Positions 8,517-61,960 of a stretch of DNA of 64,000 nucleotides are shown piece after piece. A model generated the notes under the pieces. It searched no databases. It saw only the letters and a list, made by a program, of their open reading frames with translations, and was not told where the DNA came from. The DNA is from Octopus sinensis (taxonomy: Eukaryota), in assembly GCF_006345805.1 (NCBI RefSeq), contig NC_042998.1:142476001-142540000 (forward strand), given 5' to 3'. Numbering within the stretch: position 1 is the stretch's first letter; the number at the start of each line of letters is the position of its first letter. A program made the translations under genes and the position numbers.

Positions 8517-8712
8517 AAGGCGGCGAGCTGGCAGAATCGTTAGCGCGCTGGCCCGTTGCTGCCTTCCGAGTTCAAATTCCGCAGAGGTCGACTTTAACTT
8601 TCATCCTTTCTGGGTCGATAAATCAAGTAGTGTAACACTAGTGTCGATATAATCGACTAGTCCTTTCTCAAAATTTGAGGTCTTGTGCCTCGAGCAGAAA
8701 AGATTACTATTA
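8517..8712 (+). mobile_element. tRNA-derived SINE (GGCGGCGAGCTGGCAGAA family)
   Basis: Head GGCGGCGAGCTGGCAGAATCGTTAG, box-B-like GAGTTCAAATTCC, core GGTCGACTTT..CTTTCATCCTTTC.GGGTCGATAAA. Relatives at about 1945..2030(-), 18460..18630(+), 22603..22840(+), 37074..37299(+) and 39590..39800(-). Confidence 0.85.
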
Positions 8713-10123: not shown

Positions 10124-10265
10124 CAGTAATCCCTCGCCAGATCGCGGTTCATCTAAACTTGCGTCGATTCCTCTGGTGTTTTGCATTTATAAAATATATA
10201 TACAAATTTTTAAAATATAGAAAAAGTTTTGGAACGTTACACCCACGATAGTCGAGGGATTACTG
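10124..10265. mobile_element. Tc1/pogo-type MITE
   Basis: TA|CAGTAATCCCTCG ... CGAGGGATTACTG|TA. Related end at about 31630..31651. Confidence 0.8.
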
Positions 10266-10562
10266 TATCAATAAATAGCATGCGAAAAACGACAAAAACG
10301 AATTTAGCTTAAATGAAGTTTTATATATATATTTTTGAAGAGCGATTGTAAAAGTTCACAAGCCAAACCAAAACACCCTCGATTAATGAAAAATGAATAT
10401 ATACAGATGAAAAATGTATGTGGATGTTAAAAAGTTCATGATGGGGCAAATGAGGCGATTGTGGAAATGGGTGTTCGATGAATGATGAATGATGCATTAA
10501 TATATACAATTGGATATTTACAAGTCTGTAATAAAGTCTTTTTTTGTTGTTGTAAAGTTCGT

Positions 10563-11138
10563 TTACTTTTTCTTGGCTGCACCCTTCTTGGCAGGCTTCT
10601 TCTTGGCGGCAGTTTTCTTAACGGCGGGTTTCTTAGCGGGTTTCTTAACGGGTTTCTTAGCAGCTTTCTTAGCCGGTTTCTTAGCGGCTGATTTCTTAGC
10701 TGCCTTCTTTGCTGGGCTTTTCTTGGCTTTCTTAGCGCCACTTTTCTTAGCGGCTGTCTTAGGTTTCTTCACTTTTGGTTTAGCTGATGCCGGTTTCTTC
10801 TTCTTCTTGGCCTCTTCTTTTTTACCAGGGGCAAGTTTAAAAGAACCAGAAGCTCCAACTCCTTTCAGCTGTTTCAGAACATTGTTGATGACACCTCTCC
10901 TAAGCGCCAAATTAATTTGTTTCAGGAGGACATTATCTTGGGTATTTACACTGTGGTTGGCTCCAATGTGTTTAACGATCCCTTGACGAGAGAGACCCTT
11001 TCTTTCTCCGCTCTTCACAATGGCTTCCTTAATCATATCAATGTAGGGAGGATGGCTCGAAGCTTTCTTCACCTTTTTTACTTTCTTAGCTTTGGGAGCA
11101 GCGGGAGCGGGTGCGGCGGGTGCAGCGGCGTCAGACAT
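10563..11138 (-). CDS. H1: Linker histone H1, single exon, 191 aa
   Basis: Ala/Pro/Lys-rich N-terminus, globular domain HPPYIDMIKEAI...SRQGIVKHI...ALRRGV...KGVGASGSFKL, and a long Lys/Ala/Pro C-terminal tail. Intact ORF with upstream TATA and H1 box. Confidence 0.97.
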   Translation of the reverse strand: MSDAAAPAAPAPAAPKAKKVKKVKKASSHPPYIDMIKEAIVKSGERKGLSRQGIVKHIGANHSVNTQDNVLLKQINLALRRGVINNVLKQLKGVGASGSFKLAPGKKEEAKKKKKPASAKPKVKKPKTAAKKSGAKKAKKSPAKKAAKKSAAKKPAKKAAKKPVKKPAKKPAVKKTAAKKKPAKKGAAKKK

Positions 11139-11265
11139 GATTGATCAGTTAATTGATGTAAAGAAAAGAAAATACTTCGTTGAGGACCAAAATTCGGGCT
11201 ACGAAGTTAGTTGGTAAGTTCACAAGAACAAACGTCAAATTCATCCCTTCGTAAAGTTAAACGCT

Positions 11266-11358
11266 TATTTATACATTACGCACGGACGTAGTAGTAATCA
11301 CATCAACAGTGCGACCACCAACTACAAATATGGCAGCCGAAATATCACAACTGTGTTT
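11266..11358 (-). promoter_or_regulatory. H1 core promoter: TATAAATA (11266..11273) and H1/AC box AAACACA (11352..11358)
   Basis: Both motifs are on the gene strand in the order expected for H1 genes. The intervening block 11275..11345 matches the paralog at 38731..38801 at 67/71 positions. Confidence 0.8.
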
Positions 11359-12429
11359 TTTGTCTATATGTTTCTGGTGTAAACTACTGGAACTTCTCTA
11401 CAAAACCTAACCAATTCATTGATAATCTAAAGAAAAGACATGTGGCTACATTTTACCGTAGAAATTCTGTTTCAGAGACATATCTGGCATATAATATTAC
11501 CATAAATATGTTGTGTTGTCTACTCCGAAAAATTACAGTAGGCTACAATCAAGACCAAATTTTAAGCTTTTTATTGATCCGTTCAAATTTTTTTAAGTTA
11601 AAATTCTAAAGAATGGTAATATCTGATATTTGTTTTTATAAATTTATTCTCCTAGATGACAATTCAAGTCAGATACGAGGGGTCTGATTACATCAACAAA
11701 CACAATTTTTAGATACCGATCCGCCATTTTCTCTTTTAAGAGTTTTCAGTCGATAAAAATATTGTCTTAATATTTTGCTAAAAACATCATTTTTGGCCTT
11801 AAGTAGTAACACGATTGTATTTTTGGTGATTTTTCTTATGTAAATGGTTAAATAAAGTTATTAATATGTACCTATAGTCAGTTTTAATGACCAGAAATCT
11901 GGTCTATACTCCACATACACTGCAAACAACACAGTACTTAGACGTAACCAGCTAAGTTCAAATATGTCACAAAATTTTTCTCAGTTATAATTTAATAGAT
12001 TGTTTCAAAATATATTTTCATTATAGAAAGGGATTATTGAGTGTCTTCCTCTTTCCTCTAGTATTTCATTCAATTGCATATTTTTTAAGATTTACAGTGA
12101 AAGCAATGTATTCGTGTATATTGTATTTTTCCGACTGAAGAGAGACAAAACTGTTTCCATCCATGGTATCATCAATCTTCTATCATTAAAACCACTTTAT
12201 TTTTCGAATGATTTCTCTAGTTATAAGCAAATTATTATCACATATTATTTTTCACTGCTATAATAAGTTGTTGTAGAACTCAAGTCAGTATTTAAATTAT
12301 TTACAAAGACTAATTTGCCAAAGAATTTGAGATCCACAAAGATTGTTTACATCACCTTTACAAAGCTATCTTCTACTCTATATTTTGGTTATATTTCCAT
12401 ACTCTCTGGATCCAGTAGTATTTCACTGA

Positions 12430-17215: not shown

Positions 17216-19863
17216 TGGTGTTAAGACACAACCTTGTTATATATATATATATATATATAAAAGGAAGGTTATAGTCAAACAGACAATATACCAAATAGCC
17301 AGATAAGAGAGATAAGTTGTTTATCTAGGTATGTATTAAGAAGCTAAATATATACATACGCACATGCACACTGACGTGCACACACACTGATGTTAAACTG
17401 AAGGTATATTAGTGGTATACTTTCTTTTTAAAGGCCTTGTATCAGTTTATGACTTATAGTGTCATATTTCATAAGGATAAATGCAAAACTAACCTTAGAG
17501 TGAGAGGTGAAGTCACTAAGTCACTGAAAAGGTCATGAACAATGATGAAAGAACCTCGACTAACAATTGACTTTGACTCAAAATATCTCAGCTGTTGTAA
17601 AAGAAAACTATACAATAGTTGTGTACAAATGAAAGAGCTCTATGAGATGAATCCTATGGGGAAAACCTTGTCAAAAATATTAGCTACAAAAAAGTAATCA
17701 TTTTTACAAATTAAAATATTTTTGTTATTTTAAGATATTTAGCTTTATAAAAGATGACATCAGATGTCAAAGGTTGCTTAACTTAATGGTACAGAGCACT
17801 TGAGATAATTATTTTGTGAGATTATTTTCCTGTTGAGATTTATTTCTCGACACAAAGACAAAATGGGGTAGCTTTCTGCAATTTCCCAAGGAGAGTTATT
17901 TGGCAGCTAGATGGCCTTCCTAAGATGAAGAAAGAGTTACACATTTTATTGCCTTAGTAACTAGAGTAAACACTTAAGTGATACAAGCTAATGAATTTGA
18001 AGAGATACAAACTATTGTTAATCTAAAATCCATTGTGCTTCATTATGAATTTCTCATAAAACATCAGAAAATCTTTTGACAGTATTTGTCATAGGAAACT
18101 TCTCATAAACATGCTTGCTAATGGACAATTCTTGTCATTAACAACTTGGTTAGGAAAATTCATGACAAGTCATACATCTCCTAAAAACATCTTAATGAAG
18201 TCACCCTAGCTATGAATTTATGCACTCTTCAAAGATCATTCATGTTTCTTACTCTGTGATGCACAGTTTCTAATAAGTTCCAAGGAAAAAACCCAGCATT
18301 CAACACATTGACAAGACTGCATAATAAAAGCTGGGTTTCTTTTCAAAACCCAAAAATACTTGACCTCTAACATTAATGTATATTAACATTAATATACATT
18401 AACTTGTTAATATTTAATATACTCTACAAAGGAAAGAAGCAAGCAGAATTGTTAGACTGTCAGGAAAATTGCTTTGTAATATTTGTTCCACCTTTTTATA
18501 TTCTGAGTTCAAATCCCATTAAGGGCAACTTTGCCTTTCATCCCTCCAGGATCGATAGCATAAAGTACAAGTCATGGTATTGACTATTCCTCCCTTCAAA
18601 ATTGCTAGCCTTCTGCCTAATTTAGATACATTTAATATACTCTAAAATATGAAGCATTTACTATTCAGTGTGGTATATTCAGATTTAGGATTTCAGGAAT
18701 ATGGTTCCTGTTTTAAAGATTGTAGTGATTCTCTTGAAAAAGATTTGTGTTCTTCATTGAGTAGATCAAGTTGCTACATGAAAGTCTTTGTAACTCCTGG
18801 TGATGGAAAATTTTAACTCGGTTTTTAATTTTATTCTATTTAAAGATAGTAAAAATATTAATGATTTCATGCTCTACTGACAGTGCTCATTGCTTATCTG
18901 TACTTAAAACATTGGTCTTTTACAAGTAACTTTTCTGAGACTCTGGTACTTATACACGATAGCTATATGATCTGAGGAATACAGAAAGAATGGTAGAAAC
19001 CCAATCAAATGTCACCCTCTCCAACCCGCTATACAGGCTTATACAACAGATCTCAAAGTGCTACCCAGGATGGACTGCTCCTACCCCAGTAACACTGCTG
19101 ATCCACATATCTGCACTTAAAATCCATTTGGTGGGTGTGGTGTGAATCTGGTTGCCTTGTCTAATTTACAGACAATGATGGATATTCATTTTTTTAATTC
19201 CTATTTTCATGGTTACTTTAATTTATGTGTATGAGGTAGAGAGGAGCATCAAAAAATATTCTGATAGCTTTTTTCCTTGAACTACTGCTCTCTGGAACTT
19301 ACTATCATTGTTTTGTGTTTCCTCTAATCAATGATGTCGAGTCCTTTAAGCTATCTGTCAATCTAGAGATTTTGAATTTCTAGACCCTTTATTCCTCCTT
19401 TATAGTCCCTTGAATTTATAGGCTCCTTCTTTTCTTCTTTGTAAGCCTTGTTTAGGATAAAATTTTATTAAAAAAACCTTTGAATTTTTTAATCCCTTTA
19501 TATATTTATAACCCTCTTGGGTTACCTTTACCATTTATTATGATAGTGGTGGAGAGTCGATAAAATAAGTTCCAGTTAAATACTGAAGTCAATACAAAAA
19601 TTACACTGCTCCCTCTACAAAAATTTCTCACATCATATTACTGCTGTGAATAGTTGACAGAACCCATAGGGATGATTACCTGTTATATATTAATGTCTTA
19701 ACTATAGACAAGTATAGGTCACTGTGTTGTGTGGGAGCATTATTGTTTAATATTAGCCTTGTGCCAATGTACAGAATCAAAGTTTTCATTGATAATGTTT
19801 GTATATACATACATACATATACACACATATATATGGATGGATGGATAGATATGTGTGAGTATG

Positions 19864-20723: not shown

Positions 20724-22944
20724 TACATGAATCTATGTTAATTACATTCAGTGCCAGATTTGTAAAGGTGACTGCTTAATGTTGGGATTAGGTAATTAGG
20801 CTCACAATTAAAAGTTCATGAATTTACCTCGTAAACTGGGAAGCAAATTGTATTCTTGAAGAAAGCACTTCATTTTGCATTGTTCCAATCAACTGTAATG
20901 AGTACCAACTATTTACTACTGCTCCATCCCTTCTTCCTTCCAGCTGCCATTCCTTGATGTGTCAGGACCAAGAAAGTATCTATTTCTATGTCTATGTCTA
21001 TTTGCAACTATTTGAGCAGCTAAAACAATTACCAAAAGTATGGTAGTACATATTTCCAAGCCATCATTTGCTCACAAGTAATGGTTGGTTGTGTTATACT
21101 TTTAGTGTCAGATTTAGAGATACATATGCATACATCATTTTTGCATGTATGTGTATGAGAGAGATAGAGAGTGCGCGAGCGAGAGAGAGAGAGTGAATGA
21201 GTACCACTTCAACATGCAAAAATATACATACGATAATACACACCTTCACTCACTCACACATACATGCAAAAAGATGTATGCATATGTATTTATATATGTA
21301 CGTATACATGACAACACATCCCTTCACTCTCTCTCTCACTCACACACATATACACACGACCATTTCATATACACATAAATACATCGTTCACTTTCTGCTC
21401 TCACTTCAAAGCAAATGTCTCCTTCCACACGTCATGAAAACAAAAATAAATAAATTTTACAGAAATTAACGAACAATAATTACAAGTCTGCGAGCCAAAA
21501 CGAAGACTCGCCCAGAAAATCTTTAATGACTATTTTGCGTACTTTGCTTTTAGCTTTCAGTAAGGATATGTCTAATAGTCTTTTATCATTTCTGATCGTA
21601 GCAGTCTACCCATTCAGTCGATGTAACTGTTCAAAAGGCACGCCTTAACAAAATGTCAAACGAGGTGGTAATGCAGACAGGGCTATTAAAAGAAATGGCC
21701 CTGCTTTTTTTTTTCTGTTAAAAACATGTTTCTTAGAAATAGTCGTATCCAAAGAGGAGATTTAAAGCATAATACACAAGAAAACTAAAACTTGTGTAAA
21801 AATCACTGCGTTTGCTGTTTACCGTAAATTATTCTTAAATTTCGTCAGAACTGTTACAGTCCACAGAGCGGGAATACAATAGAGCAATTTAGCGCTCAAA
21901 AAGCAACGGAAATCTTATTTCATCATCCGCAAATCTGAAAGATAACGTATACGAGAAATGAGGAGAGTTTGGTGACGAGGAACTGCAAATCTCGCAGAAG
22001 CAATAGAGCTGAACTGATGCGATATCCCAAACTAAAAAGTAGTTTATATGTTTAAGACATTAAAGTAAAATTCCTTTTAACATGAAGAGTAAATAAATAT
22101 AGTTTGGTATAATCAATAAATAGAAAGGTTACAGAGAAAGATATTTTGGGGCTAATGCCAAGATAATACCGATAAAACTTCATATTTCGCCTTCGAAGTT
22201 TCTCGAGATGGGCGGAGGTAAAGAATGTGTACACACCCGTTTTCGGTGGTTTTTTTTTTCAATTTTTTTCGGATTTCTATGTTTTCGTTATAGAATACAA
22301 TTTTGCCCAAAAATCACGTTTTCAAAATTTTTATTTCCCCCTACCACACCCCAATTTCTTAACTTTTTTTTACTTTTTCGATTTTTTTAAAATTCACGTA
22401 GAAAAATATAGAGATTACGAATCTGGGAAATTTTTTTTAACTTCTAATTTTTCTTTAAGAAACACTCAATATCCTTTCCAGCCGCACCCCGCCTCACCCA
22501 CCCGCTTTCAAAAAACTAAAAACTCAAAATGCTTTACTTTCGTCCGTTTCCCGCATGCATAGAATTCTACTGAAATAGCAGATGTCAAAAATATCAGACC
22601 ACCATGTTAAGGCGGCGAGCTGGCAGAATCGTTAGCACGCCGGACGAAATGCGAAGCCGAATTTCGTCTGCCGTTATGTTCTGAGTTCAAATTCCGCCGA
22701 GGTCGACTTTGCCTTTCATCCTTTCGGGGTCGATAAATTAAGTACCAGTTACGCACTGGGGTCGATGTAATCGACTTAATCCATTTGTCTGTCCTTGTTT
22801 GTCCCTTCTGTTTAGCCCCTTGTGGGTAATAAAGAAACACAAATATTAGACCACTACCAGAAATCTCAACATGCTAGAAACAACAACTAAACAACATTAT
22901 TTCGAGAAAAATTTCCCCGCTTTCAAAAACGAGATTATCTAAAG

Positions 22945-36314: not shown

Positions 36315-36726
36315 GGATCTTTTCGGTTTGAACGGCAGTTTTTTAAAATAATTTCCGCATAACTAAACACTTTTAAACTTCGTATACTGGTAGAATGTGT
36401 TTATAAAACATCTTTTTCTCTTTGCTTTATTGAGAAAATTCTGTAGTTTGTAAGATGATTGTTGTTGTTTTTTTTTAATTTCTGCAATTTCAACCAATCA
36501 ATGACGTCTATTGAGATAAAAAAAAACATTCTGTGCCGTATGAATGTCCCTCGTTTAAGAAACAGATTGGGTTTATTTACATTTCTGAAGAAAAAAAGAT
36601 ACCCTTCCCCCCACCCTAACCCTAAAACAGATTGAAATGCAATAGATCGATACTAGGGTAATAATTATGGGTGACAATTTCATATGACACCGCTAGAAAA
36701 AACTGTCGTTCAAACCGAAAAGATCC
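36315..36726 (+). mobile_element. GGATCTTTTC-family MITE, 412 bp, in the 3' UTR of the H1 pseudogene
   Basis: TIRs GGATCTTTTCGGTTTGAACGGCAGTTTT / AAAACTGTCGTTCAAACCGAAAAGATCC. 8-bp TSD GAATTATT. Confidence 0.9.
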
Positions 36727-36794: not shown

Positions 36795-37003
36795 TTACTT
36801 TTTCTTTGCTGCGGCCTAAGGTGTTTTGGCGGCTTCCTTTGGGGCTATAAGTTTCGTGGCTGCTTTCTTGGTACCACTTTTCTTAGCTTCCTTCAGTTTT
36901 TGGTTTAACGTGTACCTTCTTAGTTGTTTTTTTTTTTTTTTCCTTTTCTACCAGCAGTGACCTTAAAAGGACCAACAGAAGCGGGTGCAGTGGCGTCAGA
37001 CAT
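36795..37003 (-). pseudogene. Histone H1 paralog with the globular domain deleted and a frameshifted tail
   Basis: Starts MSDATAPAS then jumps to a GSFK-like segment (VGPFKV). Tail remnants AKKSGTKKA...AAKKK*. The sequence around the stop (AAGTAAACGAACTTTACA) is identical to the intact H1. Frameshifts and a premature stop are present. Confidence 0.9.
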
Positions 37004-37073
37004 GATTGTTCAATCAATGTACCAGGTGCATTCAAGAGTTTTGAGACCTTTGCAGAAGAGATGGTTATTAGTT

Positions 37074-37299
37074 GAAGACGGCGAGCTGGCAGAAACGTTA
37101 GCACGCCGGGCGAAATGCTGAGCTGTATTTCGTCCGTCTTAACGTTCTGAGTTCAAATTCCGCCGAGGTCGACTTAGCCTTTCATCCCTTTCATGGTCGA
37201 TTAAATAAGTACCAGTTACGCACTGGGGTCGTTGTAATTGACTTAATCCCTTTGTCTGTCCCCTCTATGTTTAGCCCCTTGTGGGCAATAAAGAAATAA
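37074..37299 (+). mobile_element. SINE inserted between the transposase stop and the mariner TIR
   Basis: 19-bp TSD GAAGAGAT(G/A)GTTATTAGTT at 37055..37073 and 37300..37318. Confidence 0.9.
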
Positions 37300-37334
37300 G
37301 AAGAGATAGTTATTAGTTTCAAAGAGGTACAAAA

Positions 37335-38399
37335 CTATTCTCCTTCAAAGTAGGATCCTTTCACTTCAATGCACTTGTTGTAGCGCTCTAGCCACTTGGT
37401 GAAAGCTCCGTGAAAGTCCTCCAAAGTGAAAGTGTCCAGGACCTTTGTCACAGCCTCCTTTATCTTCTCAATGTCATCAAAACGTCTACCTTTGAGTTTC
37501 TCTTTCAGCCTGGAGAAAAACCAAAAGTCACAGGGAGAAAGATCTGGACTGCAAGGCGGTTGAGGGACAGTTTTAATGCCCATCTCTGTCAAGTAGTTGG
37601 TTACCAGGATGGAATTGTGGACTGGTGTATTGTCCTGGTGTAGATGCCACCGACCCGATTGGTAGAGCTCTGGCCTTTTGTAGGGAAATTTTTCCCCGAA
37701 CTCCCTCAAAACCTCCACAAAATACTCTTTGGTGACGCTCTGGCCAGAGGGAACCCAGTGGGTGTAGATTATGCCTTTGCTGTCGAAAAAGGGGATCATC
37801 ATGAGCTTCCTGGTGTACTTGCTTTGCTTGGCCTTCTTCGGTGTGGGGGAGCCAAGATTACTTTGGGCACTCTGTCCCTCGGTCTCTGGATCATAACAGT
37901 AGATCCAGCTTTCGTCACATGTCACCAGAGACTCAAGTACTCTTGGATTGGAGGTAATGAGTTCAACCATCTCCTTGCTGTCACCAACGCGTCTTTCTTT
38001 TTGTTCATCACTGAGCACACTAGGAACAAACTTAGCACAAATTTTGCGCATTTTCAAATCTTCATGAATAATTCTGTGTACAGTTGCCACACCAACTCCA
38101 AATTGTATGCTTATTGTCTTAATAGACACACGACTATCTTCATCCAGAAAATTGCGAATTTTCTCCACTAGTTCTGATGTTCTGACGTCTTTCTCCCTTC
38201 CACACCTCTCATCGTCTCTTACCTCCGCTCTACCGTCCTTAAACCTCTTGTGCCAGCGAAAAACAGATGATCGACACATACAAGTTAATCCATAAGCAGC
38301 CTGGAGCATTTCATAAGTTTCTCTAGCGTTTTTGCCCAGTTTAACACAAAACTTTATTGCATAGCGAACTTCCAAATTGTCTTCGCGTCCTGACTGCAT
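37335..38399 (-). CDS. mariner DD34D transposase, open ORF of 354 aa
   Basis: HTH N-terminus (RYAIKFCVKLGK...FRWHKRFKDGR), FVPSVL, TCDESW, HQDN and SPDLSPCDF, with exactly 34 residues between the second and third catalytic Asp, ending YFEGE*. Confidence 0.92.
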   Translation of the reverse strand: MQSGREDNLEVRYAIKFCVKLGKNARETYEMLQAAYGLTCMCRSSVFRWHKRFKDGRAEVRDDERCGREKDVRTSELVEKIRNFLDEDSRVSIKTISIQFGVGVATVHRIIHEDLKMRKICAKFVPSVLSDEQKERRVGDSKEMVELITSNPRVLESLVTCDESWIYCYDPETEGQSAQSNLGSPTPKKAKQSKYTRKLMMIPFFDSKGIIYTHWVPSGQSVTKEYFVEVLREFGEKFPYKRPELYQSGRWHLHQDNTPVHNSILVTNYLTEMGIKTVPQPPCSPDLSPCDFWFFSRLKEKLKGRRFDDIEKIKEAVTKVLDTFTLEDFHGAFTKWLERYNKCIEVKGSYFEGE

Positions 38400-38721
38400 T
38401 CTACAAACTTGTCAGCTGCAACAAGCTGTGTTTAGTGGGGTGTTTTCAAAGGGATGTTACAGCCGTTTTGCACAGTCTGGAATTATAAAAAAAACATTCG
38501 CAAGTCAACTTAAATGTATTACTAAAATTACAATAATTTATGATAGCTACAACTACCTCTCCTAAAAGTTTCAAAACTTCCGGAATGCACCTCGTAAATA
38601 TGAAAAAAAAAAAATGAAAATCCTTCAGTATGAACGAAGATTCTGGTTACGAAGCTCGACGGAATGTTCGCAAAAACGAACAAGTGACTAACTCAAGTTG
38701 CACTTCCTAACGTTACAAGCT

Positions 38722-38814
38722 TATTTATAGATTGCGCACGGACGTAGTAGAAATCACATCAACAGTGCGACAAGCAACTACAAATATGGCAGCCGAAATA
38801 TAACAACTGTGTTT
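38722..38814 (-). promoter_or_regulatory. Paralogous H1 promoter: TATAAATA (38722..38729) and H1 box AAACACA (38808..38814), now upstream of the transposase
   Basis: Direct alignment to 11266..11358. Confidence 0.8.
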
Positions 38815-40157
38815 TTTGTTTCAATATTTGTAGTGTAAACTACTGTAACTTCATTACAAAACCTAACCAGTTCACCGAAAAACCCAAAGAAAAGATGTGG
38901 CTACATTTTATCGCAGAAATTCTGTTTTAGAGATAGTTCTGGCACATAATATCACCACAAACATCTTGTGTTGTCTACACTGAAACATCAATATAGGCTA
39001 CGATCAAGACTACATTTTAAGTCTTTCATTTGCCCGTTCAAGATATTTTTTATCAAAAATTTAAAGGATAATAATATATAATATAGTGTTTTGTAAATTC
39101 ATTCTCCTAGATGACAATGCAAATCAGATGCAGGGGGTCCGATTGCACCAACAAACACAATTTTTAGATACCAATCCGCCATTTTCTCTTCTAACAATTT
39201 TCAGTTGATAATATTCTTAATATTTTGCTAAAAACATCATTTTTGGACTGTAAATGATAACATGTATGATGATGTTTCCTTTGTAAATAAGTGAATAAAG
39301 TTGTTGTTTTTTGTTTTTTTTGTATCTTTAGTGAGTTTTAATGACCGGAAATCTGATTTATACTTCGGATACACTATTAACACAGGACATAGACGTTACT
39401 ATTTAGGTTGAAATATGTCACATTTTCTTCAGTTGCAATATAATTTCATAACATATTTCCAATAGATTTACAGTCAAAGCAATATATTCATATATATTGT
39501 ATTTTTCCAACTGAAGAGCGACGAAACCACTGAATCATTATTTTTCGATTTATTTCCCTATTATCAGCAAATTATTTTCCACTGTATTAATCCTTTCTAG
39601 TATAGGCACAAGGCCTGAAGTTTTGCGTGAGTAGACTAGTTGATTACATCCACCTCTTGTACTTCACCAATAATTTATTTCATCACCCCCAAAATGATGA
39701 AGGGCAAAGTCGATGTCGGTGACATTTGAACTGAGAATGTAAAATCGAACGAAATACCGCTTGGCATTTTGTACGGCGCAGTAAAGTTTCTGTCAGCTAG
39801 CTGCCTTATTTCTCACTATAATGATAGATTGTAATAGCACTCAAGTCAGCATTTTAATTATTATTTTTCAAAACTAATTAATTAACAAAAAAAATCTGAG
39901 GTCCCAAACGTTGTTTACATCATCTTTACAAAGATATCTACGACTTCATATTTCGGTTGCATTTCTCTCTTGTCGGGATCCAGTGATATTTCCTTATAAC
40001 TGAACATAATACCTTCAATTCATATTGGAGCCAAAAAAGGGAATTTTGTTGCAATTGTAAATAAAATTTATATGAATCTTAGTTACCGATAGAGATGTAA
40101 ACACACACAGGCTTCATTTAAATGATTGTGAATATGTATGGGTTTTAGATACATGTA

Positions 40158-43119: not shown

Positions 43120-44319
43120 TTAGGTCATCAAGTATGAAATTTGTAGTAAGGCATATGGTAAACTTTGATAGCTGCTCATTTTGCACCATTATTATGTTTC
43201 GGCAATCTTTATTTTTTGTTAGAAAGCTGACACATCTATAGTTTTATTCTAACTCATTTTGCACTTTATAAAGTATTTATAAATCGTTTTTTGCTATTTT
43301 TGTTTAGAGATGGATAAGTTGGAAATTCATAGTAAAGTTTTGAAATATGAGTTCTTTCTTGGAAATTTAGCATCACAGCTCGGAATATAAATGGAGTATT
43401 TCATTCTAATGTTATTACACAACAGACAGCATCAAATTGGTTTGCAAAATTTTGTTCTGGTAACTTTGACCTCATAAATGAGCAATGCAGTCAACCAGAA
43501 ACAAAGGTGGATAATGACAAACTGAAAGCCACCATCAAGTCAGATCCATCTCAAAGCACTCATGAATTATCGTTGTTGTTTGGTGTTAGCAAGCAAACAA
43601 TATTGACTCACCTAGTTCAAATAAGTAAAGTGAAAAAGTTAGATAAATAGGTTCCACATGAATTCAATGAAAATCAGAAGCAGCAATATTTGGAAGTCTG
43701 CTTACACTACTTTCTCGTCACAAAAATTAATCATTTTTTAATCGAATTGTAATATGTGATGGGAAATGGATCCAATACAGCAACTGTAAATGTTCAGCAC
43801 AATGACTGAACAATGACAAGCCAACAAAACATAGTCCAAAAAGCAAAATTCATCAAAAGAAGCTGATGGTGTGTGTTTGGTGGTCTGGTGCAGGTGTGAC
43901 CCATTATGATTTCATTAAACCTGACTCATCAATCGCAGCTAAAGTATACAGCAGCCAACTGGACCAAATGAGGCTGAAACTTACAAAAAAACAGCCTAGA
44001 TTAGTCAACAGATCCACTCCTATTTTATTGCAAGACAACGTCAGACCACATATCGCAAAAATGACATTGGCGAAACTACAGAAGATGGAGTTGGAAGTTC
44101 TCCATCATCGACTATACTCACCTGCTCTTTCCCCCACTGACTACCACTTCTTCCAGAATTTGGATAACTTTTTGATAGGAAAAACTTTAATTCCGATGAT
44201 GCTGCAAAGCAGGCATTCCAAGATTTTATTGACTCTAGATTGCCAGTTCCGGGCTGGACAAGCTACTTCTGAAATGACTAAAACGTATTGACAATATGGG
44301 TGCATACTTGATGACTTAA
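43120..44319 (+). mobile_element. Full-length but decayed mariner (Mos1/cecropia-like)
   Basis: TIRs TTAGGTCATCAAGTATG / CATACTTGATGACTTAA with TA TSDs. Motifs VCVWW, LLQDNVRPH, YSPALSPTDYHFF. Stops and frameshifts. Confidence 0.9.
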
Positions 44320-45719
44320 TAAAACAAACACCTATGGAAGAAATCTAAACCATAAGAAACATTCCAATCAGAAGAGTTTTCTTTTCAAAAAGTTCCTATT
44401 GTATTGTTTTAATAGAAGAACAGATTTTATTTTTTAAGCATTTATCATTTTATTTGTTTTGTTTTCATGTATCGTTAATGCTGCTGTTATTTTATATTTA
44501 TACCAAAATACACAACTACTTTTTTATGAATTTTGAAATTAATAAAAAATTTATAGCAATAACTTTGTCATTTTATTAAATTAGTATTTATAACATAAAT
44601 ATTAAATTTTATGGGAAAGTTTTAATTTATCTTTTTTCTTTTACTTGTTTCAGTCATTTGACTGTGACCATGCTGGGACACTGCCTTGAAGGATTTAAGT
44701 CAAACGAATCAACAATTGGATTTATTAGTTTTTGAAGCCTAATACTTATTCTATTAGGCAGTTCTGCTGAACTGCTATGTTACAGGGATGTAAACACACT
44801 GCCACCAGATGTGAAGCAGTGAGGGGAGGGAGAAACACAAAGTAGGTGCAGGTGTGCTGTGTGGTAAGAAACTTGCTTCTTAACCACCACATGATTCCAG
44901 GTTCAGTTCCACTGCATGACACTTTGGGCGAATGTCTTCTACTATAGCCTCAGGCCAACCAAAGCCTTATAAGTGGATTTTGATGGGTGGAAACTGAAAG
45001 CCAATTATATATATGTGTGTGTATATATACACACACACAAATATATATATGTATATATCTATGTGTGTGATTTACTTTATTTTAAAACAGGATGGTTGTT
45101 TTATAGAACTGGAGGTACTCTCAGTCAAGTGAGTATCAAAAGGGTTAATATCAAATTGTTCTGAACTGTTTTTCGGTTTCAAATTATACATTTTCCAAAC
45201 TATTATTTCCACATCCCCATAAAATCTTACTTAACAAAGATTCACTCTAAATTTATACTTTAGCAATCATGAAGCACTTCATGGTTTTTGAAACTTTGTA
45301 CCTATGATGTCCATATATGCATCAAGACTCTTAATACTTCAATGCCTTTTGAGATAATAGATTGATGGATTAACCCTTCAGGATTATTGTTGTTTGTTGT
45401 AAGTGATCTACAACTGATCAGATTTTCCTTTACCACAAACTAGCACATCTCTGAATCTATTCATATATGATGCCAATAACATACATATATTGTATTGTTC
45501 CAGGAGTCTTTTATTATATTCTTGTATCATTTCTATTCATTTTATATTTTTTTATCAAAAAATATAATGTAATGTTATATAGTCACAGGCATGGTTATGC
45601 GGTTAAGAAGCTTGCTTTGCAACCATGTGGTTTCGAGGTTAGTTCCACTGCATGGCACCTTGCACAGCAATACACGTGTCCCAGCATTCCTGCCACTTTT
45701 GGAATCCAGCCTGGAAGTT

Positions 45720-46260
45720 ATTTTCTATAAGCGAGTCGAGGACCTTCTGCAATTCACTCAGGATCTTGACAATGAAATGTTAAAATAGTGACCTCTGAGC
45801 TGCATTTTCATCTTGGGAAAGAGATGAAAGTCTGCAGCAGGCACTAAGTCTTGTGAATAGGGCAGGTGCAGAAGCAATGCCATGTTACTTTTGGCCAGAA
45901 ACTCATGAGTGAGAGAGCTCAGTGATAGGGTGCATTGTCATTGTGAAGAATCCAATTCTTTACACTCCAAAGATCTGATCACTATCGTCAAATGTCCTCC
46001 TTAAATGCTTGAAAATGTTGTTGATTATCCTCCAACGATCCTCATGCTCAAGCTGATGAATTTTCTCCATATTTCTAGGGGAGATGCATATGGCAGGTCT
46101 TCCAGATTGCTCATTATCTTCCAGGTACATTCTTCCACTTTCTAAGCGACCATGCCACTTGAAACATTGTGTACTACCCATTGCCTCATCACCATAAACT
46201 TGCTGAAGCATGTTCAATGTCTCTGTAGTAGACTCCCCAAGTTAATAATGATTTGGCTGT
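45720..46260 (-). mobile_element. Internally deleted mariner relic
   Basis: LQQVYGDEAMGSTQCFKWHGR...SGRP and DLVPADFHLFPKMKMQLRG. Confidence 0.75.
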
Positions 46261-47600
46261 TATTTCTTGCAGAATGAGTGACCACTAAGGGACAGTTCCG
46301 ACCTGGAGTAAACTCCTCATACATACACGCACACATGATGCATACATCCACTCAAACACACAAACACGTACTTATTAAATAAGCCTTTAGTTCGTTGTTT
46401 AGCCCCAGGTCAGTTCTGACCGAGCAGATGTATGACCAAAGACAATTTACCCATAACCATCCCGTTTTTTTCTATTTTTTCAGGCATTACAGCATTGACT
46501 GCATAATCTAATGTGTAACATTATTTGGGACTTGGGAAGACGAGATAGCTACTTTTGGAACGCTCTTATACGACGGGACGGTCACAATTGGAATGCTTTT
46601 ACTGCTTATCTTTGCGCGTCATCGTACATTTTTGCGTGTGTGTAGGCACGCGAAAAAACGCATGCGCAATAAATGTTCGATTTTGGCGCTGGAAATTATT
46701 TTCGAAATGTCCAGAGTTTCGTCTTCATATCATACGAAACACATACTTAATCAATCTACATATTGTTCATTTAAATTTAAAAATAATTACGACTTGCTGA
46801 TCAATATTTTTCTTATCTTGTTTTAACTTTTCTTTAAAATATTGTTCTAATCTGAAAAATTACTCTTCTTTTACTCCATATTCTTATATCAAATTACACT
46901 GACTCACAAAATATTGCCCTATGCAATAAATTTACTCCTCCAGTTATTTAAACATGTTTATAATATGGAAATTAAAAAAAAATTGAGAGTTATCTCCTCT
47001 TAATAATTATTATGTTTCTCTGTATTAATTACATTAACACATGCTTGTTTAAGACTCAAACAATGGGGAAATCTACGCGGGAAAATACGGAAATTAAGAT
47101 TATGGAAAAAATAAACACAATTCCTTAACTATTCATTAGCAATGTAAGGAACGTGGAGTCAACTAAGAGCACCCGAATTCTTGACTTACTACTGACCTCA
47201 TTTATTAACCACTAACTCGATCAATAATGGAAAATAGTTTCATCTAACCTATTTTTACTACTTTGCTATACCGATTATAGTTTTACCTTACAGACGCACA
47301 TATACATGTATGTGTGTGTTTGTATGTAGGTATGTATATCAGTTCATTTTGAATATACCACAAATTTATTCTCTAGAACGATGTAAATGTTTTATTTTGT
47401 CTTCACAGTGTTTACAGTTTTACAAAATTAAATTAGAAAACTGGACCAAAACAGAAAACACAATTTTAAAAAATTAAAAAGGAAGAAAAGAGAAAGAAAA
47501 AAATCAAAACAATTCACCACCTTGGGTTCTTAACCAAAGTCTATATGGCCCCTGGGGGTCCATGCTGGCAAAATAGTAAAGGGATCCACAGTAGTATTTT

Positions 47601-59163: not shown

Positions 59164-61960
59164 CAGTGGTGTACCAAGAGGCGGTGGGAAAGACGGTCCA
59201 CCCGGGCGGCACAATTTATTTATATTAACATATCATTAATAAAAATGCAATATGAATATTATAGACTTTAATAATGTATGCTAGCTATTCAAATTTCCTT
59301 AAAAATTAAATTTACCATCTGTAAACTTGTACTGTGTATTAATATTGTGTAAGATACAGTATAATATTGTGTGTTACTGGATAAGACAGTCTGTCGATGC
59401 TATTCAGAAAGTTGATTATTTTTTAGGTTGGTCTATACTCTATTTGATTTTATTCATATAAATTTACGATATCACTGATATAATTTGTGATGAAGCGAAT
59501 TAAGGACAGCGGTGCAGCATTTCGAAAAAAAAAACGAGAGAAGAAGAAAGGCGAAATGAAGGTGCCATAATTAAATTTCTCATCAAACCCGACCGTTTAG
59601 ACGAAACTGGTATTACTGTAGAAGGTCTTGGAGATGATGTTGTTAATGAAGTGCAACTTGAAAAGATGATAGAAGATGAAGTCGATGATGCTGATCCACC
59701 ACCAACTACTGAAGAACAAAACTCTAATATTAATTTGAAAGACATTGGGATGTGGCCTGCTAAGTTTAATCCTGCTGACGGTATTCGGGAAATCCTTGTA
59801 CAACAAGGATCGAAGGCTATGCAAAATATTAACTGTGAACGTCCAGGACAAATAACAGAACTGAAAGGGGAGACTAGAAGACTGTCAAGAAACTGTTTTT
59901 TTTTTCGAACTTTACAAAACGGGGGAAAATTTTTGAGAATTTGGATAATATACTCTCCATCGAAAGAAGCCGTGTTTTGTTGTAAGCTATTTTCAAGTGA
60001 AAACTCAAAGTTTTGCTCAGTTGATAGTTTCAAATCTTGGTGGAATTTGAATCCTAAGATACAAGAACATGAATCTAGCCCTGCGCATGAGAATGCGTTC
60101 ATTCAGTGGAAAGAGTTAGAAATTCGCCTTTCCAAAGGCAAGGTAATAGACAAAAAACAACAAACCCTTGTTGAAAATGAAACAAAGAAATGAAAGCAAA
60201 TCCTGACTAGATTCTTGGGCATAATTATGTTTCTTGCTAAGTTTTACGAGGCCATAGAGAAGATATTCGAGTTGAGAAGGCAAATGATTATCCAGTGCTA
60301 CATGAACATTTGGTGAAAGTAAAAATTGTTAAGTTAACAACTTCCTATCTCTCACCAAAAATTCAGAATGAATTTGTGAACGTCCTGGGAGATAAAGTGA
60401 GAAAGAAAGTTATCGATGAAGTTAAACAGAGTAAATACTATTGCGTTATTTTTTTATAATACTCATATATTTTTCATATTGACCAAATTCTCGGGTGCTA
60501 CGTTATGTTAAAATAGATGAAAAGGAAGTAAAAGTAGAAGAATCCTTTCTTCATTTTATTGAGATGAAAGGCGAAAATGCTGAGCAAATTACATCGATGA
60601 TTCTGAAACAATTAAAAATGGACGGCATAAACATTCAAGACTGTCGTGGACAAGCATTTGATAACGCGGCAGTAATGGCAGGTCATCGATCCGGTGTTCA
60701 AGCGCACATCACGGAAGTTAATCCAAAGACTGTATTTGTGCCATGCCCCTATCACTCTCTGAATTTAACTGCTGTGCAAGCACCTTCTGTGGGTGCAGAT
60801 TCAGTTACGGTTTTTGGCACATTTGACCGTTTATTGTCATTCTTCTCTACCTCAACTCATCGATGAGATATCTTGATTGAGATAACTGGTGCAACTGTCA
60901 AACGGGCTGCAGAAACGAGATGGAGTAGTCGAACAGATGCAGTAGAAGTTGTACTTACAAAAATTCACGGAAATCATCGCTGCGCTAGAACGGTTGAAAA
61001 CGTAACTACGCGATCTGATGCAGCTTTAATTCTTCAGGTGATGCTGTCATTTTCTTTCTTGTCATTTTTTGGCCATGGGAGAGATATACTTTCTCAAATT
61101 AATGGCACTCAAAAGTACCTCCAAACGAAAGGTCTGGAGTTGCAACAATGTACCATTAAACTATCAGCCTTGGAAACTTCTCTACTTGTAAGCAGAAGCA
61201 AAACAGTAGATAACGCGTTGGTCTATTCAATCGAAATTTGCTCTATGGGAATCTGCACAGATCGTCGAATTCGCAAAAAGAAAAGAATGAACTACGAAGA
61301 AAGTATCGATGCCGCCGCTCTCAGCTACGACGCTGAGGTAAGAAGAGAAATGTTGTCACTGATAGACTGGTTGAAGAATTAACCTCTAGATTCGAAAGAC
61401 TTCACGATATTGCAAAGAAATACACCTTTCTCACACCGTTTCTTAGATAAAGAGTGTAATTGTGATGTAGATGCTTTTGATGAGAATATTAAGAGAGAAT
61501 ACTTTTTGGTTGAAAGGACAAGGCTGCAAAATTATTTGGTGGTTGCTGACGCTGAAGACATGGAAAGGCCATTGCAAATTCTTCAGTTTATTCAGAAATA
61601 TGCTCTTATTGATTCATTGTCAAATATTGTAAGAGCGCGACCTTGCGAATAAAATTAATTTTGATGAAGTCATTCAAGATTTCGCGAAGAAGAAGACACG
61701 TAAAATCAATTTGTAAATCATTTATTTTTGTAATTCATTCATCTTTTTTTAAACATATTTGTCCTATTATTTTTTGTGTATAAACATTATAAAAGTAAAT
61801 TTGAGAGAAATAAATGGCTGCTACAGTTTGTCTCCTTATTTTGCATACACACATACCTGTATTATTCCATTTTGGGCCTTTTGAAATGTTGATTAGAACT
61901 TTCAAGTGGCAACCAAATAAACATCCGCCCCGGCCGGCACTTGTGATTGATACGCTACTG
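59164..61960 (+). mobile_element. Full-length decayed hAT transposon (ZMYM1/TTF-zinc-finger-like transposase, about 59570..61715)
   Basis: TIRs CAGTGGTGTA / TACGCTACTG with perfect 8-bp TSD GGTACCGG. Motifs W.IYSPSKEAVFC..C, DCRGQAFDNAAVMAG...GVQA, PCPYHSLNL, ETRWSSR. The ORF is broken into several pieces. Confidence 0.92.

What the first reader, a model, noticed from the sequence alone, without database searches (positions are those of the whole stretch)
37022..38830. An intact mariner transposase placed under a conserved histone H1 promoter (promoter capture, candidate domestication)
Seen: a mariner inserted at a TA 17 bp upstream of the ATG of the dead H1 paralog, in the same orientation. 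Its open 354-aa DD34D ORF starts about 320 bp downstream of the H1 TATA box. The promoter block between TATA and H1 box matches the functional H1 promoter at 67/71 positions with CpGs retained, while the paralog's coding tail and flanks are visibly more diverged. The TIRs differ from each other at several positions, a SINE landed just outside the ORF, and every other mariner in the window is decayed. Inference: the H1 promoter may now drive transposase expression, possibly a co-opted gene. Caveats: FVPSVL and CSPDL motif changes and loss of a conserved Trp after the first catalytic Asp suggest decay, and one short uORF (MFFL*) lies in the leader.
Basis: partly seen in the sequence, partly recalled or inferred. 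Interest (0 to 1): 0.75.

Follow-up and report, generated by a model that had tools for sequence, protein, structure and literature searches.

The report
Mariner transposon inside dead octopus H1
One intact-looking mariner "jumping gene" sits just behind the well-kept core promoter of a dead histone H1 gene copy in Octopus sinensis; it is most likely an ordinary insertion, but I could not run the tests that would show whether the octopus has co-opted it.

Summary
The window is Octopus sinensis chromosome CM016860.1. A 1,328-bp DD34D mariner, carrying a later 225-bp SINE, lies at 37022-38594 (- strand). It is flanked by TA duplications, 16 nt upstream of the ATG of a degenerate H1 duplicate and in the same orientation. 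Its 354-aa ORF is open and keeps D162/D256/D291.

With Argonauta hians H1 as outgroup, the duplicate's upstream region is relaxed overall: 24 changes against 4 in the working copy. An ~85-bp stretch from H1 box to TATA is the exception. None of its 73 deeply conserved sites changed (permutation P = 5e-4), and variable sites inside it did diverge, so gene conversion does not explain it.

The ORF carries changes at positions that relatives keep (Trp179 deleted, Tyr283Cys, Ala258Thr, Arg127Ser). It shows no excess of replacement changes over a related element. Weak non-coding clocks suggest the copy is not brand new.

The decisive tests could not be run, because no other Octopus sequence was reachable: copy number, the orthologous locus in other octopuses, and transcripts. 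Ordinary insertion is my best reading (0.58). Co-option stays a live minority reading (about 0.12).

The parts
38826..39540 (-). Distal and far-upstream part of the duplicated H1 upstream region (relaxed in this copy)
   Evidence: It aligns to 11370-12150 of the working H1 locus. At sites conserved between the working copy and Argonauta, this copy changed at about 16% (20/122 distal; 29/185 further upstream).
38718..38825 (-). H1 core promoter block, with H1 box AAACACA at 38814-38808 and TATAAATA at 38729-38722
   Evidence: 98/108 identical to the working H1 promoter. Only 4 of 89 deeply conserved sites changed, with an unbroken run of 73 unchanged sites at 38819-38735 (permutation P = 5e-4). 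The two longest motifs occur only at the two H1 loci in the window.
38597..38717 (-). Remnant H1 5' UTR between TATA and the insertion site
   Evidence: 26.6% mismatch plus 4 gaps against the working copy. It is not conserved in Argonauta.
38595..38596 (.). TA target-site duplication, 5' side
   Evidence: Read from the sequence. The empty site is reconstructed by comparison with the working copy's ...CTTTACATCAATT....
38564..38594 (-). Mariner 5' terminal inverted repeat
   Evidence: CGAGGTGCATTCCGGAAGTTTTGAAAC... It matches the TIRs of relatives L002 and L003 and carries derived changes at positions 14 and 25.
38400..38563 (-). Mariner 5' UTR, with the only upstream ORF (MFFL*, 38497-38483)
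   Evidence: Leader scan.
37335..38399 (-). Open 354-aa DD34D mariner transposase ORF (D162, D256, D291)
37299..37318. SINE target-site duplication, copy 1 (AACTAATAACTATCTCTTCT)
37074..37298 (+). 225-bp SINE inserted in the mariner 3' UTR, antisense to the ORF
   Evidence: It is 85.7% identical to the copy at 22609-22837. ARAGORN calls no tRNA gene in it.
37054..37073 (.). SINE target-site duplication, copy 2 (AACTAATAACCATCTCTTCT, 1 mismatch)
37022..37052 (-). Mariner 3' terminal inverted repeat
   Evidence: Its reverse complement reads CCAGGTGCATTCAAGAGTTTTGAGACC. Derived changes are at position 2, a 1-nt deletion, and position 28.
37020..37021 (.). TA target-site duplication, 3' side
36795..37019 (-). 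Dead H1 coding remnant (ATG 37003-37001; globular domain deleted; premature stops)
   Evidence: 126 alignable coding bases show 13.5% mismatch and several large deletions.
36315..36726 (.). MITE-like insert in the dead H1's 3' flank (30-nt inverted ends, 97% complementary)
   Evidence: It coincides with the gap in the paralog alignment.
10563..11369 (-). Working H1 gene (191 aa, ORF 10563-11138) with its core promoter (H1 box 11358-11352, TATA 11273-11266), used as the reference copy

Best explanation
This is one copy of a 1,328-bp DD34D mariner DNA transposon. It inserted by cut-and-paste into a TA in the 5' UTR of a duplicated histone H1 gene of Octopus sinensis, 16 nt before the H1 start codon and in the same orientation (shown).

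The H1 duplicate is now a pseudogene (shown). Its globular-domain coding region is deleted. It has premature stops. Its distal promoter elements have drifted at the neutral rate. A MITE sits in its 3' flank, and a SINE later landed in the mariner's 3' UTR.

The transposase ORF is complete and keeps the catalytic triad. It most likely remains open because this copy has not sat here long enough to be hit, or is one of the lucky few, and not because the host uses it (inferred).

The ~85-105-bp H1 core promoter upstream is truly better preserved than neutral sequence. The simplest cause is that the duplicate served as a working H1 gene for most of the time since duplication. The mariner landing between promoter and start codon may be what ended that (inferred).

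If the promoter still fires, transcripts starting near 38690 would run about 95 nt into the mariner. They would reach the transposase ATG after about 290 nt and one 4-codon uORF. Any transposase made this way would be incidental read-through rather than a host function (inferred).
For: - Standard mariner anatomy: TA duplications, TIRs, a single HTH+DD34D ORF, and 1,328 bp once the SINE is removed.
- The locus looks like decaying DNA. Tajima's relative-rate test over the proximal 270 upstream sites gives 24 changes on this copy against 4 on the working copy (p = 1.8e-4). The next region upstream gives 29 against 11. The H1 coding region has large deletions. Three transposable-element insertions lie in or next to the unit.
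- The ORF departs from residues that 12 relatives, and Mos1 or Hsmar1, keep. Trp179 is deleted, YSPDLAP reads CSPDLSP, DNAP reads DNTP, and FVPRVL reads FVPSVL. K174E, R186T and S195Y cluster after the first Asp.
- The alignable H1 coding remnants are less diverged (13.5%) than neutral flanks (21-27%). This fits a duplicate that was under selection as H1 for part of its life. The remnants are chosen best-matching segments, so this is weak.
- If the copy is 1-2% diverged in place, an unselected ORF of this length stays open in 7-27% of simulations.
- In the sister species O. vulgaris, 73 Tc1-Mariner families have 1,553 insertions at 2% divergence or less (PMC13282606). Young intact mariners are therefore expected.
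- No gene with this product is on record for the O. sinensis assembly, whereas the neighbouring H1 is.
Against: - The core promoter is conserved far beyond the rest of the duplicate: 0 of 73 deep sites changed against about 16% elsewhere (P = 5e-4). Variable sites inside the block diverged at 6/17. If the duplicate worked as a normal H1 gene, its distal elements should have been constrained too, because they are conserved between Octopus and Argonauta. They were not.
- Weak non-coding clocks hint that the insertion is not brand new. There are at least 5 derived changes in 56 bp of TIR, while a relative has perfect TIRs. There is 1 mismatch in the SINE's 20-bp target duplication, and about 9 private changes in the SINE body.
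- At 3-5% neutral divergence, an unselected ORF would be open in only 2% down to under 0.1% of simulations.
- The ORF's own branch shows no excess of replacement changes over a related element: 34 against 33 amino-acid changes, and codon positions 16/20/42 against 25/16/52.
Confidence: 0.58

Rival explanations
1. Co-opted (domesticated) transposase. The mariner inserted early in the life of the dead H1 duplicate. Since then its ORF has been expressed from the captured H1 core promoter and kept open by selection for a host function, probably DNA binding rather than transposition.
For: - The core promoter has been under constraint while the H1 coding region and distal promoter decayed.
- The ORF is open, in the same orientation, with a short leader and one tiny uORF.
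- TIR asymmetry and the SINE clocks are compatible with an age at which an unselected ORF would rarely survive.
- Replacement changes on the ORF branch are not in excess.
- Changes cluster in the catalytic half (9 of 64 invariant columns) rather than the DNA-binding half (1 of 14), but the difference is not significant (p = 0.68).
Against: - There is no evidence of expression, orthology or single-copy status.
- Both TIRs and both TA duplications are still recognisable, so the copy is not obviously immobilised.
- The catalytic triad is intact, which domestication does not require.
- No canonical AATAAA or ATTAAA lies on the sense strand for more than 600 nt after the stop codon.
- The locus has accumulated a SINE and a MITE, as neutral DNA does.
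- No gene model with this product is on record.
- The prior for any one mariner copy being domesticated is very low in a genome with many young copies (PMC13282606).
Confidence: 0.12
2. The core promoter is kept for a reason unrelated to the transposase ORF. It may still recruit H1-specific transcription machinery and make a non-coding or chimeric transcript. Or it may act as a regulatory or factor-binding element for the neighbourhood. The ORF is a passenger.
For: - The constraint is confined to the ~85-bp stretch from H1 box to TATA. These motifs are conserved perfectly between Octopus and Argonauta: a 23-nt run ATATTTCGGCTGCCATATTTGT and a 19-nt run GTCGCACTGTTGATGTGAT.
- H1-specific promoter motifs are known binding targets of a dedicated factor, CRAMP1, in human cells (PMC12240685).
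- The ORF shows departures at conserved catalytic-motif residues.
Against: No transcript or binding data are available. No other gene or conserved ORF was seen near the element. This reading has no independent support beyond the constraint itself.
Confidence: 0.15
3. Gene conversion from the working H1 copy recently homogenised the core promoter, so its similarity says nothing about selection.
For: Two paralogues lie 27 kb apart on one chromosome, and the similar block is sharply bounded.
Against: Within the block, sites that vary between Octopus and Argonauta differ between the two copies at 6 of 17 (35%). That is as much as neutral sequence elsewhere. Deeply conserved sites differ at 4 of 89, and at 0 of 73 in the central run. 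Conversion would erase differences at both classes of site.
Confidence: 0.03

Closest known systems
Mos1 mariner of Drosophila mauritiana (transposase structures 3HOS/3HOT)
   Same: Both are about 1.3-kb elements with TA target duplication, ~30-bp imperfect TIRs, and a single ~350-aa ORF with an N-terminal paired HTH and a DD34D catalytic domain. The ORF aligns full-length to Mos1 at E = 5.5e-37.
   Different: The relationship to Mos1 is distant. The linker motif is FVPSVL rather than WVPHEL, and YSPDLAPSD is CSPDLSPCD. The nearest relatives (73-74% aa) come from unidentified marine animals in ENA/TARA assemblies.
SETMAR (Metnase), the Hsmar1 mariner transposase domesticated in anthropoid primates
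   Same: In both, a single mariner transposase ORF lies downstream of host gene sequence in the same orientation, and a SINE has inserted next to the ORF. The catalytic domains match at E = 3.3e-27.
   Different: From established knowledge, SETMAR is spliced to SET-domain exons, is conserved at one locus across anthropoids, is under purifying selection, and has lost one catalytic Asp (DDN). Here there is no fusion, no orthology or selection evidence, and an intact DDD triad.
Metazoan histone H1 promoters (H1 box/AC box AAACACA, CH1UE, CCAAT, TATA; CRAMP1-dependent in humans)
   Same: An H1 box lies about 85 nt upstream of a TATA box in both octopus copies and in Argonauta. H1-specific motifs are described in PMC12240685.
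   Different: No canonical CCAAT box was seen in the block. The working octopus H1 has no recognisable histone 3' stem-loop. The cephalopod-specific conserved runs between H1 box and TATA have no described factor.
Transposon insertion into the 5' UTR of a gene or duplicate, with chimeric read-through transcripts
   Same: A transposon separates a promoter from its coding sequence, and the downstream gene is dead.
   Different: Here the inserted element still carries a complete ORF in sense orientation, and the upstream core promoter shows measurable constraint.

Membership tests
mariner (Tc1/mariner superfamily, DD34D) transposon | TA target-site duplication flanking the element | tested here: met
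   TA at 38596-38595 and at 37021-37020. The working H1 copy has a single TA at the equivalent site.
mariner (Tc1/mariner superfamily, DD34D) transposon | Terminal inverted repeats of about 28-32 bp | tested here: met
   The ends match each other at 24-25 of 31 columns and match the TIRs of relatives L002 and L003.
mariner (Tc1/mariner superfamily, DD34D) transposon | Single ~340-360-aa transposase with N-terminal HTH DNA-binding domain and a D,D(34)D catalytic triad | tested here: met
   Pfam HTH_48, Transposase_1 and DDE_3. D162, D256 and D291 align to Mos1 D156, D249 and D284.
mariner (Tc1/mariner superfamily, DD34D) transposon | Conserved linker (WVPHEL-type) and YSPDLAPxD motifs intact | tested here: inconclusive
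   The motifs are present but altered at positions kept by 11-12 of 12 relatives: FVPSVL (Arg to Ser, also in P0004) and CSPDLSPCD (Tyr to Cys, Ala to Ser). Whether these changes belong to the family or arose in place is unknown.
mariner (Tc1/mariner superfamily, DD34D) transposon | Multiple related copies in the host genome | not testable with these tools
   There is no second copy in the 64-kb window. No Octopus sequences are in the searchable collections.
Domesticated transposase gene (SETMAR-like co-option) | Present at the orthologous locus, with open ORF, across species that diverged long ago | not testable with these tools
   Only Argonauta hians H1 could be reached among cephalopods.
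Domesticated transposase gene (SETMAR-like co-option) | Purifying selection on the ORF after insertion (dN/dS < 1 against family consensus or orthologues) | tested here: inconclusive
   Only relatives at 70-74% aa identity are available. The relative-rate test shows no excess replacement change on this branch (34 against 33). That fits either a young neutral copy or an old selected one.
Domesticated transposase gene (SETMAR-like co-option) | Transcribed from a host promoter | not testable with these tools
   The geometry allows it, and the core promoter shows constraint. No expression data are available.
Domesticated transposase gene (SETMAR-like co-option) | Loss of mobility (TIRs lost or disabled) | tested here: inconclusive
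   Both TIRs are present. They carry at least 5 derived changes, including position 2 of the 3' TIR and a 1-nt deletion. The effect on binding is unknown.
Histone H1 promoter | H1 box (AAACACA) upstream of a TATA box, conserved among H1 genes | tested here: met
   H1 box at 38814-38808 and TATA at 38729-38722. The same elements are in the working copy (11358-11352, 11273-11266) and in Argonauta.
Replication-dependent histone gene | 3' stem-loop instead of a poly(A) signal | tested here: not met
   There is no Rfam histone 3' UTR stem-loop match in the whole window at gathering score. There is none even at E up to 10 in the region spanning the working H1's stop codon and 3' flank.

The most novel reading that the evidence does not exclude
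An octopus lineage has turned a mariner transposase into a host gene by capturing the core promoter of a dying histone H1 duplicate. The H1 box-to-TATA module, and probably its proliferation-linked activity, has been kept by selection for tens of millions of years solely to express the transposase-derived protein. The H1 coding region and distal enhancers decayed meanwhile.
Probability: 0.12. Interest if true: 0.7.

Novelty: new member of a known kind. Interest (0 to 1): 0.4.

Why it matters
If this is ordinary, it is one more transposon hit in a redundant gene copy. It still serves as a worked example of using a distant outgroup to separate real promoter constraint from mere similarity.

If the minority reading is right, it would be a rare documented mariner domestication outside primates. 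It would also be an unusually clean case of promoter capture, because the birth of the gene could be dated against the decay of the H1 gene it replaced.

Either way, the outgroup comparison exposes a strikingly conserved cephalopod H1 promoter core. Runs of 23 and 19 nt are identical between Octopus and Argonauta, which points to specific, still unnamed binding factors.

Tried and rejected
1. Looking for other copies or orthologues. Two protein searches, one with the full ORF and one with a 158-aa fragment, gave nothing above 74% identity and no Octopus hits. Exact look-ups showed that neither the ORF nor even the working H1 protein is in the 15-billion-protein collection. The ORF is also not a called gene in the assembly. 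Copy number and orthology could therefore not be tested. The absence of close hits is not evidence of single-copy status.

2. An H1 protein search for close outgroups returned only Argonauta hians among cephalopods. It was still useful for polarising promoter changes.

3. Classical dN/dS against relatives was dropped, because the nearest relatives differ at 26-30% of residues. A three-taxon relative-rate test by codon position replaced it.

4. Gene conversion as the cause of promoter similarity was rejected on the divergence of variable sites.

5. The SINE as a clock gave about 9 private changes in about 170 polarisable sites. O. vulgaris has about 900 SINE families (PMC13282606), so these may be subfamily differences. 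I treat this as weak.

6. Rfam found nothing at gathering score in the window, and no histone stem-loop at E up to 10 in the region spanning the working H1's stop codon and 3' flank. ARAGORN found no tRNA gene in the SINE.

7. The other mariner-like remnants in the window were rejected as age comparators, because they belong to different families.
Full report
**Where this is.** An exact look-up of the 191-aa H1 protein encoded at 10563-11138 (- strand) places the window on Octopus sinensis chromosome CM016860.1 (GCA_006345805.1), near 142.48 Mb. That ORF is a bona fide linker histone (Pfam Linker_histone, E = 2.3e-24).

**Checking the observation.** On the - strand, the sequence reads as follows:
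- H1-type upstream region;
- TATAAATA (38729-38722);
- a diverged H1 5' UTR;
- TA (38596-38595);
- a mariner (38594-37022);
- TA (37021-37020);
- 16 nt;
- the ATG of an H1 remnant (37003-37001).

The working H1 copy has a single TA at the matching place, so this is a standard mariner insertion with TA duplication.

The ORF 38399-37335 encodes 354 aa with HTH_48, Transposase_1 and DDE_3 domains. It aligns over its whole length to Mos1 transposase (3HOS, E = 5.5e-37). D162, D256 and D291 sit opposite the Mos1 catalytic residues, with 34 residues between the last two.

A 225-bp SINE (37074-37298, + strand) lies 36 nt after the stop codon. It is flanked by a 20-bp target duplication with one mismatch. 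Without it the mariner is 1,328 bp.

The only upstream ATG between TATA and the ORF is the MFFL* uORF at 38497.

The other mariner-like pieces in the window share only 25-40% protein identity and no DNA similarity with this element. They belong to other families and are not informative about this one.

**The H1 duplicate is dead.** The duplicated segment runs from about 39540 to about 36040 and matches about 12150-10250. The duplicate's coding region has lost the whole globular domain and part of the tail. It has premature stops, and only 126 coding bases can still be aligned, at 13.5% mismatch. A 412-bp MITE-like insert with 30-nt inverted ends lies in its 3' flank.

**Is the promoter really conserved?** Similarity between a working and a dead copy can arise from constraint on the working copy alone, so I polarised the changes with an outgroup. 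The H1 gene of Argonauta hians (P0121, locus L004) aligns with the octopus upstream region for about 600 nt. It shares perfect runs such as ATATTTCGGCTGCCATATTTGT and GTCGCACTGTTGATGTGAT between the H1 box and TATA, and a far-upstream block containing GAGAAAATGGCGGAT and TAAAAATTGTGTTTGTT.

Tajima's relative-rate test over the proximal 270 sites gives 4 changes on the working copy's lineage and 24 on the duplicate's (p = 1.8e-4). Further upstream the counts are 11 and 29 (p = 0.006). As a whole, the duplicate's regulatory region is relaxed.

The relaxation is not uniform. The table gives the fraction of sites changed in the duplicate, among sites identical between the working copy and Argonauta.

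| Region | Changed / total | Fraction |
|---|---|---|
| Distal promoter | 20 / 122 | 16% |
| Far-upstream region | 29 / 185 | 16% |
| Core block 38825-38718 | 4 / 89 | 4.5% |

- Fisher's test of core against distal gives p = 0.008.
- Inside the core is an unbroken run of 73 unchanged sites (38819-38735). Permutation gives P = 5e-4 for a run that long, and P = 0.065 for the fixed 89-site window.
- Sites within the core that vary between Octopus and Argonauta differ between the two octopus copies at 6 of 17, as much as neutral DNA. Gene conversion or a local mutation cold spot therefore does not explain the pattern.

The duplicate's core promoter has been under purifying constraint for most of the time since duplication.

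**What the constraint does and does not show.** It shows that the core promoter was used. It does not show by what.
- *Reading (a):* the duplicate was a working, if regulatorily simplified, H1 gene for most of its life. In favour, the coding remnants are less diverged (13.5%) than neutral flanks (21-27%). These are chosen best-matching segments, so this is weak.
- *Against (a):* the distal elements decayed at the full neutral rate, although they are conserved from Octopus to Argonauta. The coding region carries more deletions than a short dead period predicts, although its Lys/Ala-rich repeats are deletion-prone.
- *Reading (b):* the promoter now serves the mariner ORF or some other transcript.

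**The ORF.** Against 12 relatives, the octopus ORF has 10 private states at columns invariant in all the others:
- an in-frame loss of Trp179;
- K174E, K180S, R186T and S195Y, clustered just after the first Asp;
- A288S in the third-Asp motif.

Further departures from the family norm are R127S, Y283C and A258T.

Two other distinct lineages, P0001 and P0003, show 11 and 17 private states at the same kind of column, though mostly conservative ones. So these changes cannot be assigned to decay in place.

A three-taxon test used L002 (P0001) as sister and L003 (P0002) as outgroup. It gives 34 octopus-specific against 33 L002-specific amino-acid changes. Codon-position counts are 16/20/42 against 25/16/52. 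There is no excess of replacement change, so the ORF has not undergone long neutral decay. That fits a young neutral copy or an older selected one equally.

**How old is the insertion?** Only weak clocks exist inside the window.
- *TIRs.* A relative (L003) has perfect 31-nt TIRs. The octopus TIRs differ at 6-7 columns, with at least 5 derived changes across 56 bp on both ends. That is about 9%, with Poisson limits of about 3-21%. It assumes the parent element had symmetrical TIRs, which is not true of all mariners (from knowledge, Mos1 has 4 mismatches).
- *SINE target duplication.* It has 1 mismatch in 20 bp.
- *SINE body.* It has about 9 private changes in about 170 polarisable sites. O. vulgaris has about 900 SINE families (PMC13282606), so these may be subfamily states.

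I simulated neutral change on the real ORF, with the indel:substitution ratio measured in this locus (17 gaps per 157 mismatches). The table shows how often the ORF stays open.

| Neutral divergence | ORF still open |
|---|---|
| 1% | 27% |
| 2% | 7% |
| 3% | 1.7% |
| 4% | 0.5% |
| 5% | under 0.1% |

If the clocks are taken at face value (3% or more), survival by chance is uncommon. However, the finding was selected because the ORF is open. The sister species also has 1,553 Tc1-Mariner insertions at 2% divergence or less in 73 families (PMC13282606). Chance survivors and truly young copies must therefore be plentiful.

**What could not be done.** No Octopus sequence other than this window is reachable.
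- The best protein hits are 73-74% identical and come from ENA/TARA assemblies of unidentified animals.
- Even the working H1 protein is absent from the protein collection.
- The ORF is not a called gene in the assembly.

Copy number, family consensus, orthologous loci and transcripts are the tests that decide the matter, and all remain open.

**Verdict.** The interpretation cannot be decided.
- *Best reading (0.58):* an ordinary mariner insertion in the 5' UTR of an H1 duplicate. The core promoter's preservation is a legacy of the duplicate's own past use, and any read-through expression is incidental.
- *Co-option of the transposase (about 0.12), and retention of the promoter for some role unrelated to the ORF (about 0.15):* these are the live alternatives.
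- *Gene conversion:* disfavoured (0.03).

The case deserves the cheap follow-up of a genome BLAST, a synteny check in O. vulgaris and O. bimaculoides, and junction reads in RNA-seq.

Noticed in passing
window 11262-11369 and 11690-11760; L004 about 2700-3000 and about 2440-2520: The H1 upstream region is strikingly conserved between Octopus sinensis and Argonauta hians. Perfect 23-nt and 19-nt runs lie between the H1 box and TATA. A far-upstream block contains GAGAAAATGGCGGAT and TAAAAATTGTGTTTGTT. From memory, GCCAT and ATGGCGG resemble YY1-type sites; this was not tested.
   Followed up: partly
window 10200-10700: The working H1 gene has no recognisable histone 3' stem-loop. Rfam gives no match at gathering score in the window and none at E up to 10 in the region spanning its stop codon and 3' flank. 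It may be a polyadenylated, 'orphon'-type H1. No core histone genes were seen among ORFs of 90 aa or more in the window.
   Followed up: partly
window 244-684 (-) and 1183-1395 (+): A third linker-histone fragment is present (Pfam Linker_histone, E = 8.9e-14, globular domain only). It runs into unrelated sequence. A mariner-like remnant of another family lies about 500 bp away. So at least three H1-related sequences lie in 64 kb, and two of them are broken.
   Followed up: partly
window 36315-36726: A MITE-like element of 412 bp, with 30-nt terminal inverted repeats 97% complementary, is inserted in the 3' flank of the dead H1 copy.
   Followed up: partly
window 43746-44291 (+), 45654-46274 (-): Remnants of two other mariner-like elements, 25-40% aa identity to the focal ORF. 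One keeps a 141-aa ORF with a Transposase_1 match (E = 1.9e-13).
   Followed up: partly
window 22609-22837 (+), 39675-39807 (-), 1946-2028, 8517-8658, 18501-18572: Further copies or fragments of the same SINE superfamily, 75-86% identical to the one inside the mariner. The copy at 39675-39807 lies just outside the upstream edge of the H1 duplication.
   Followed up: partly
window 59500-61382: Several consecutive ORFs of 120-200 aa lie on both strands. The three tested (59651-60193, 60495-60866, 60873-61382) have no Pfam match. They may be a broken transposase-like or other gene.
   Followed up: no
L003 (ENA ERZ25067582 contig ctg12092) and L002 (TARA scaffold): The nearest relatives of this mariner form large clusters (153 and 626 member sequences for P0002 and P0005). 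In L003 the element has perfect TIRs and TA duplications. The family therefore appears recently active in some unidentified marine animal.
   Followed up: partly
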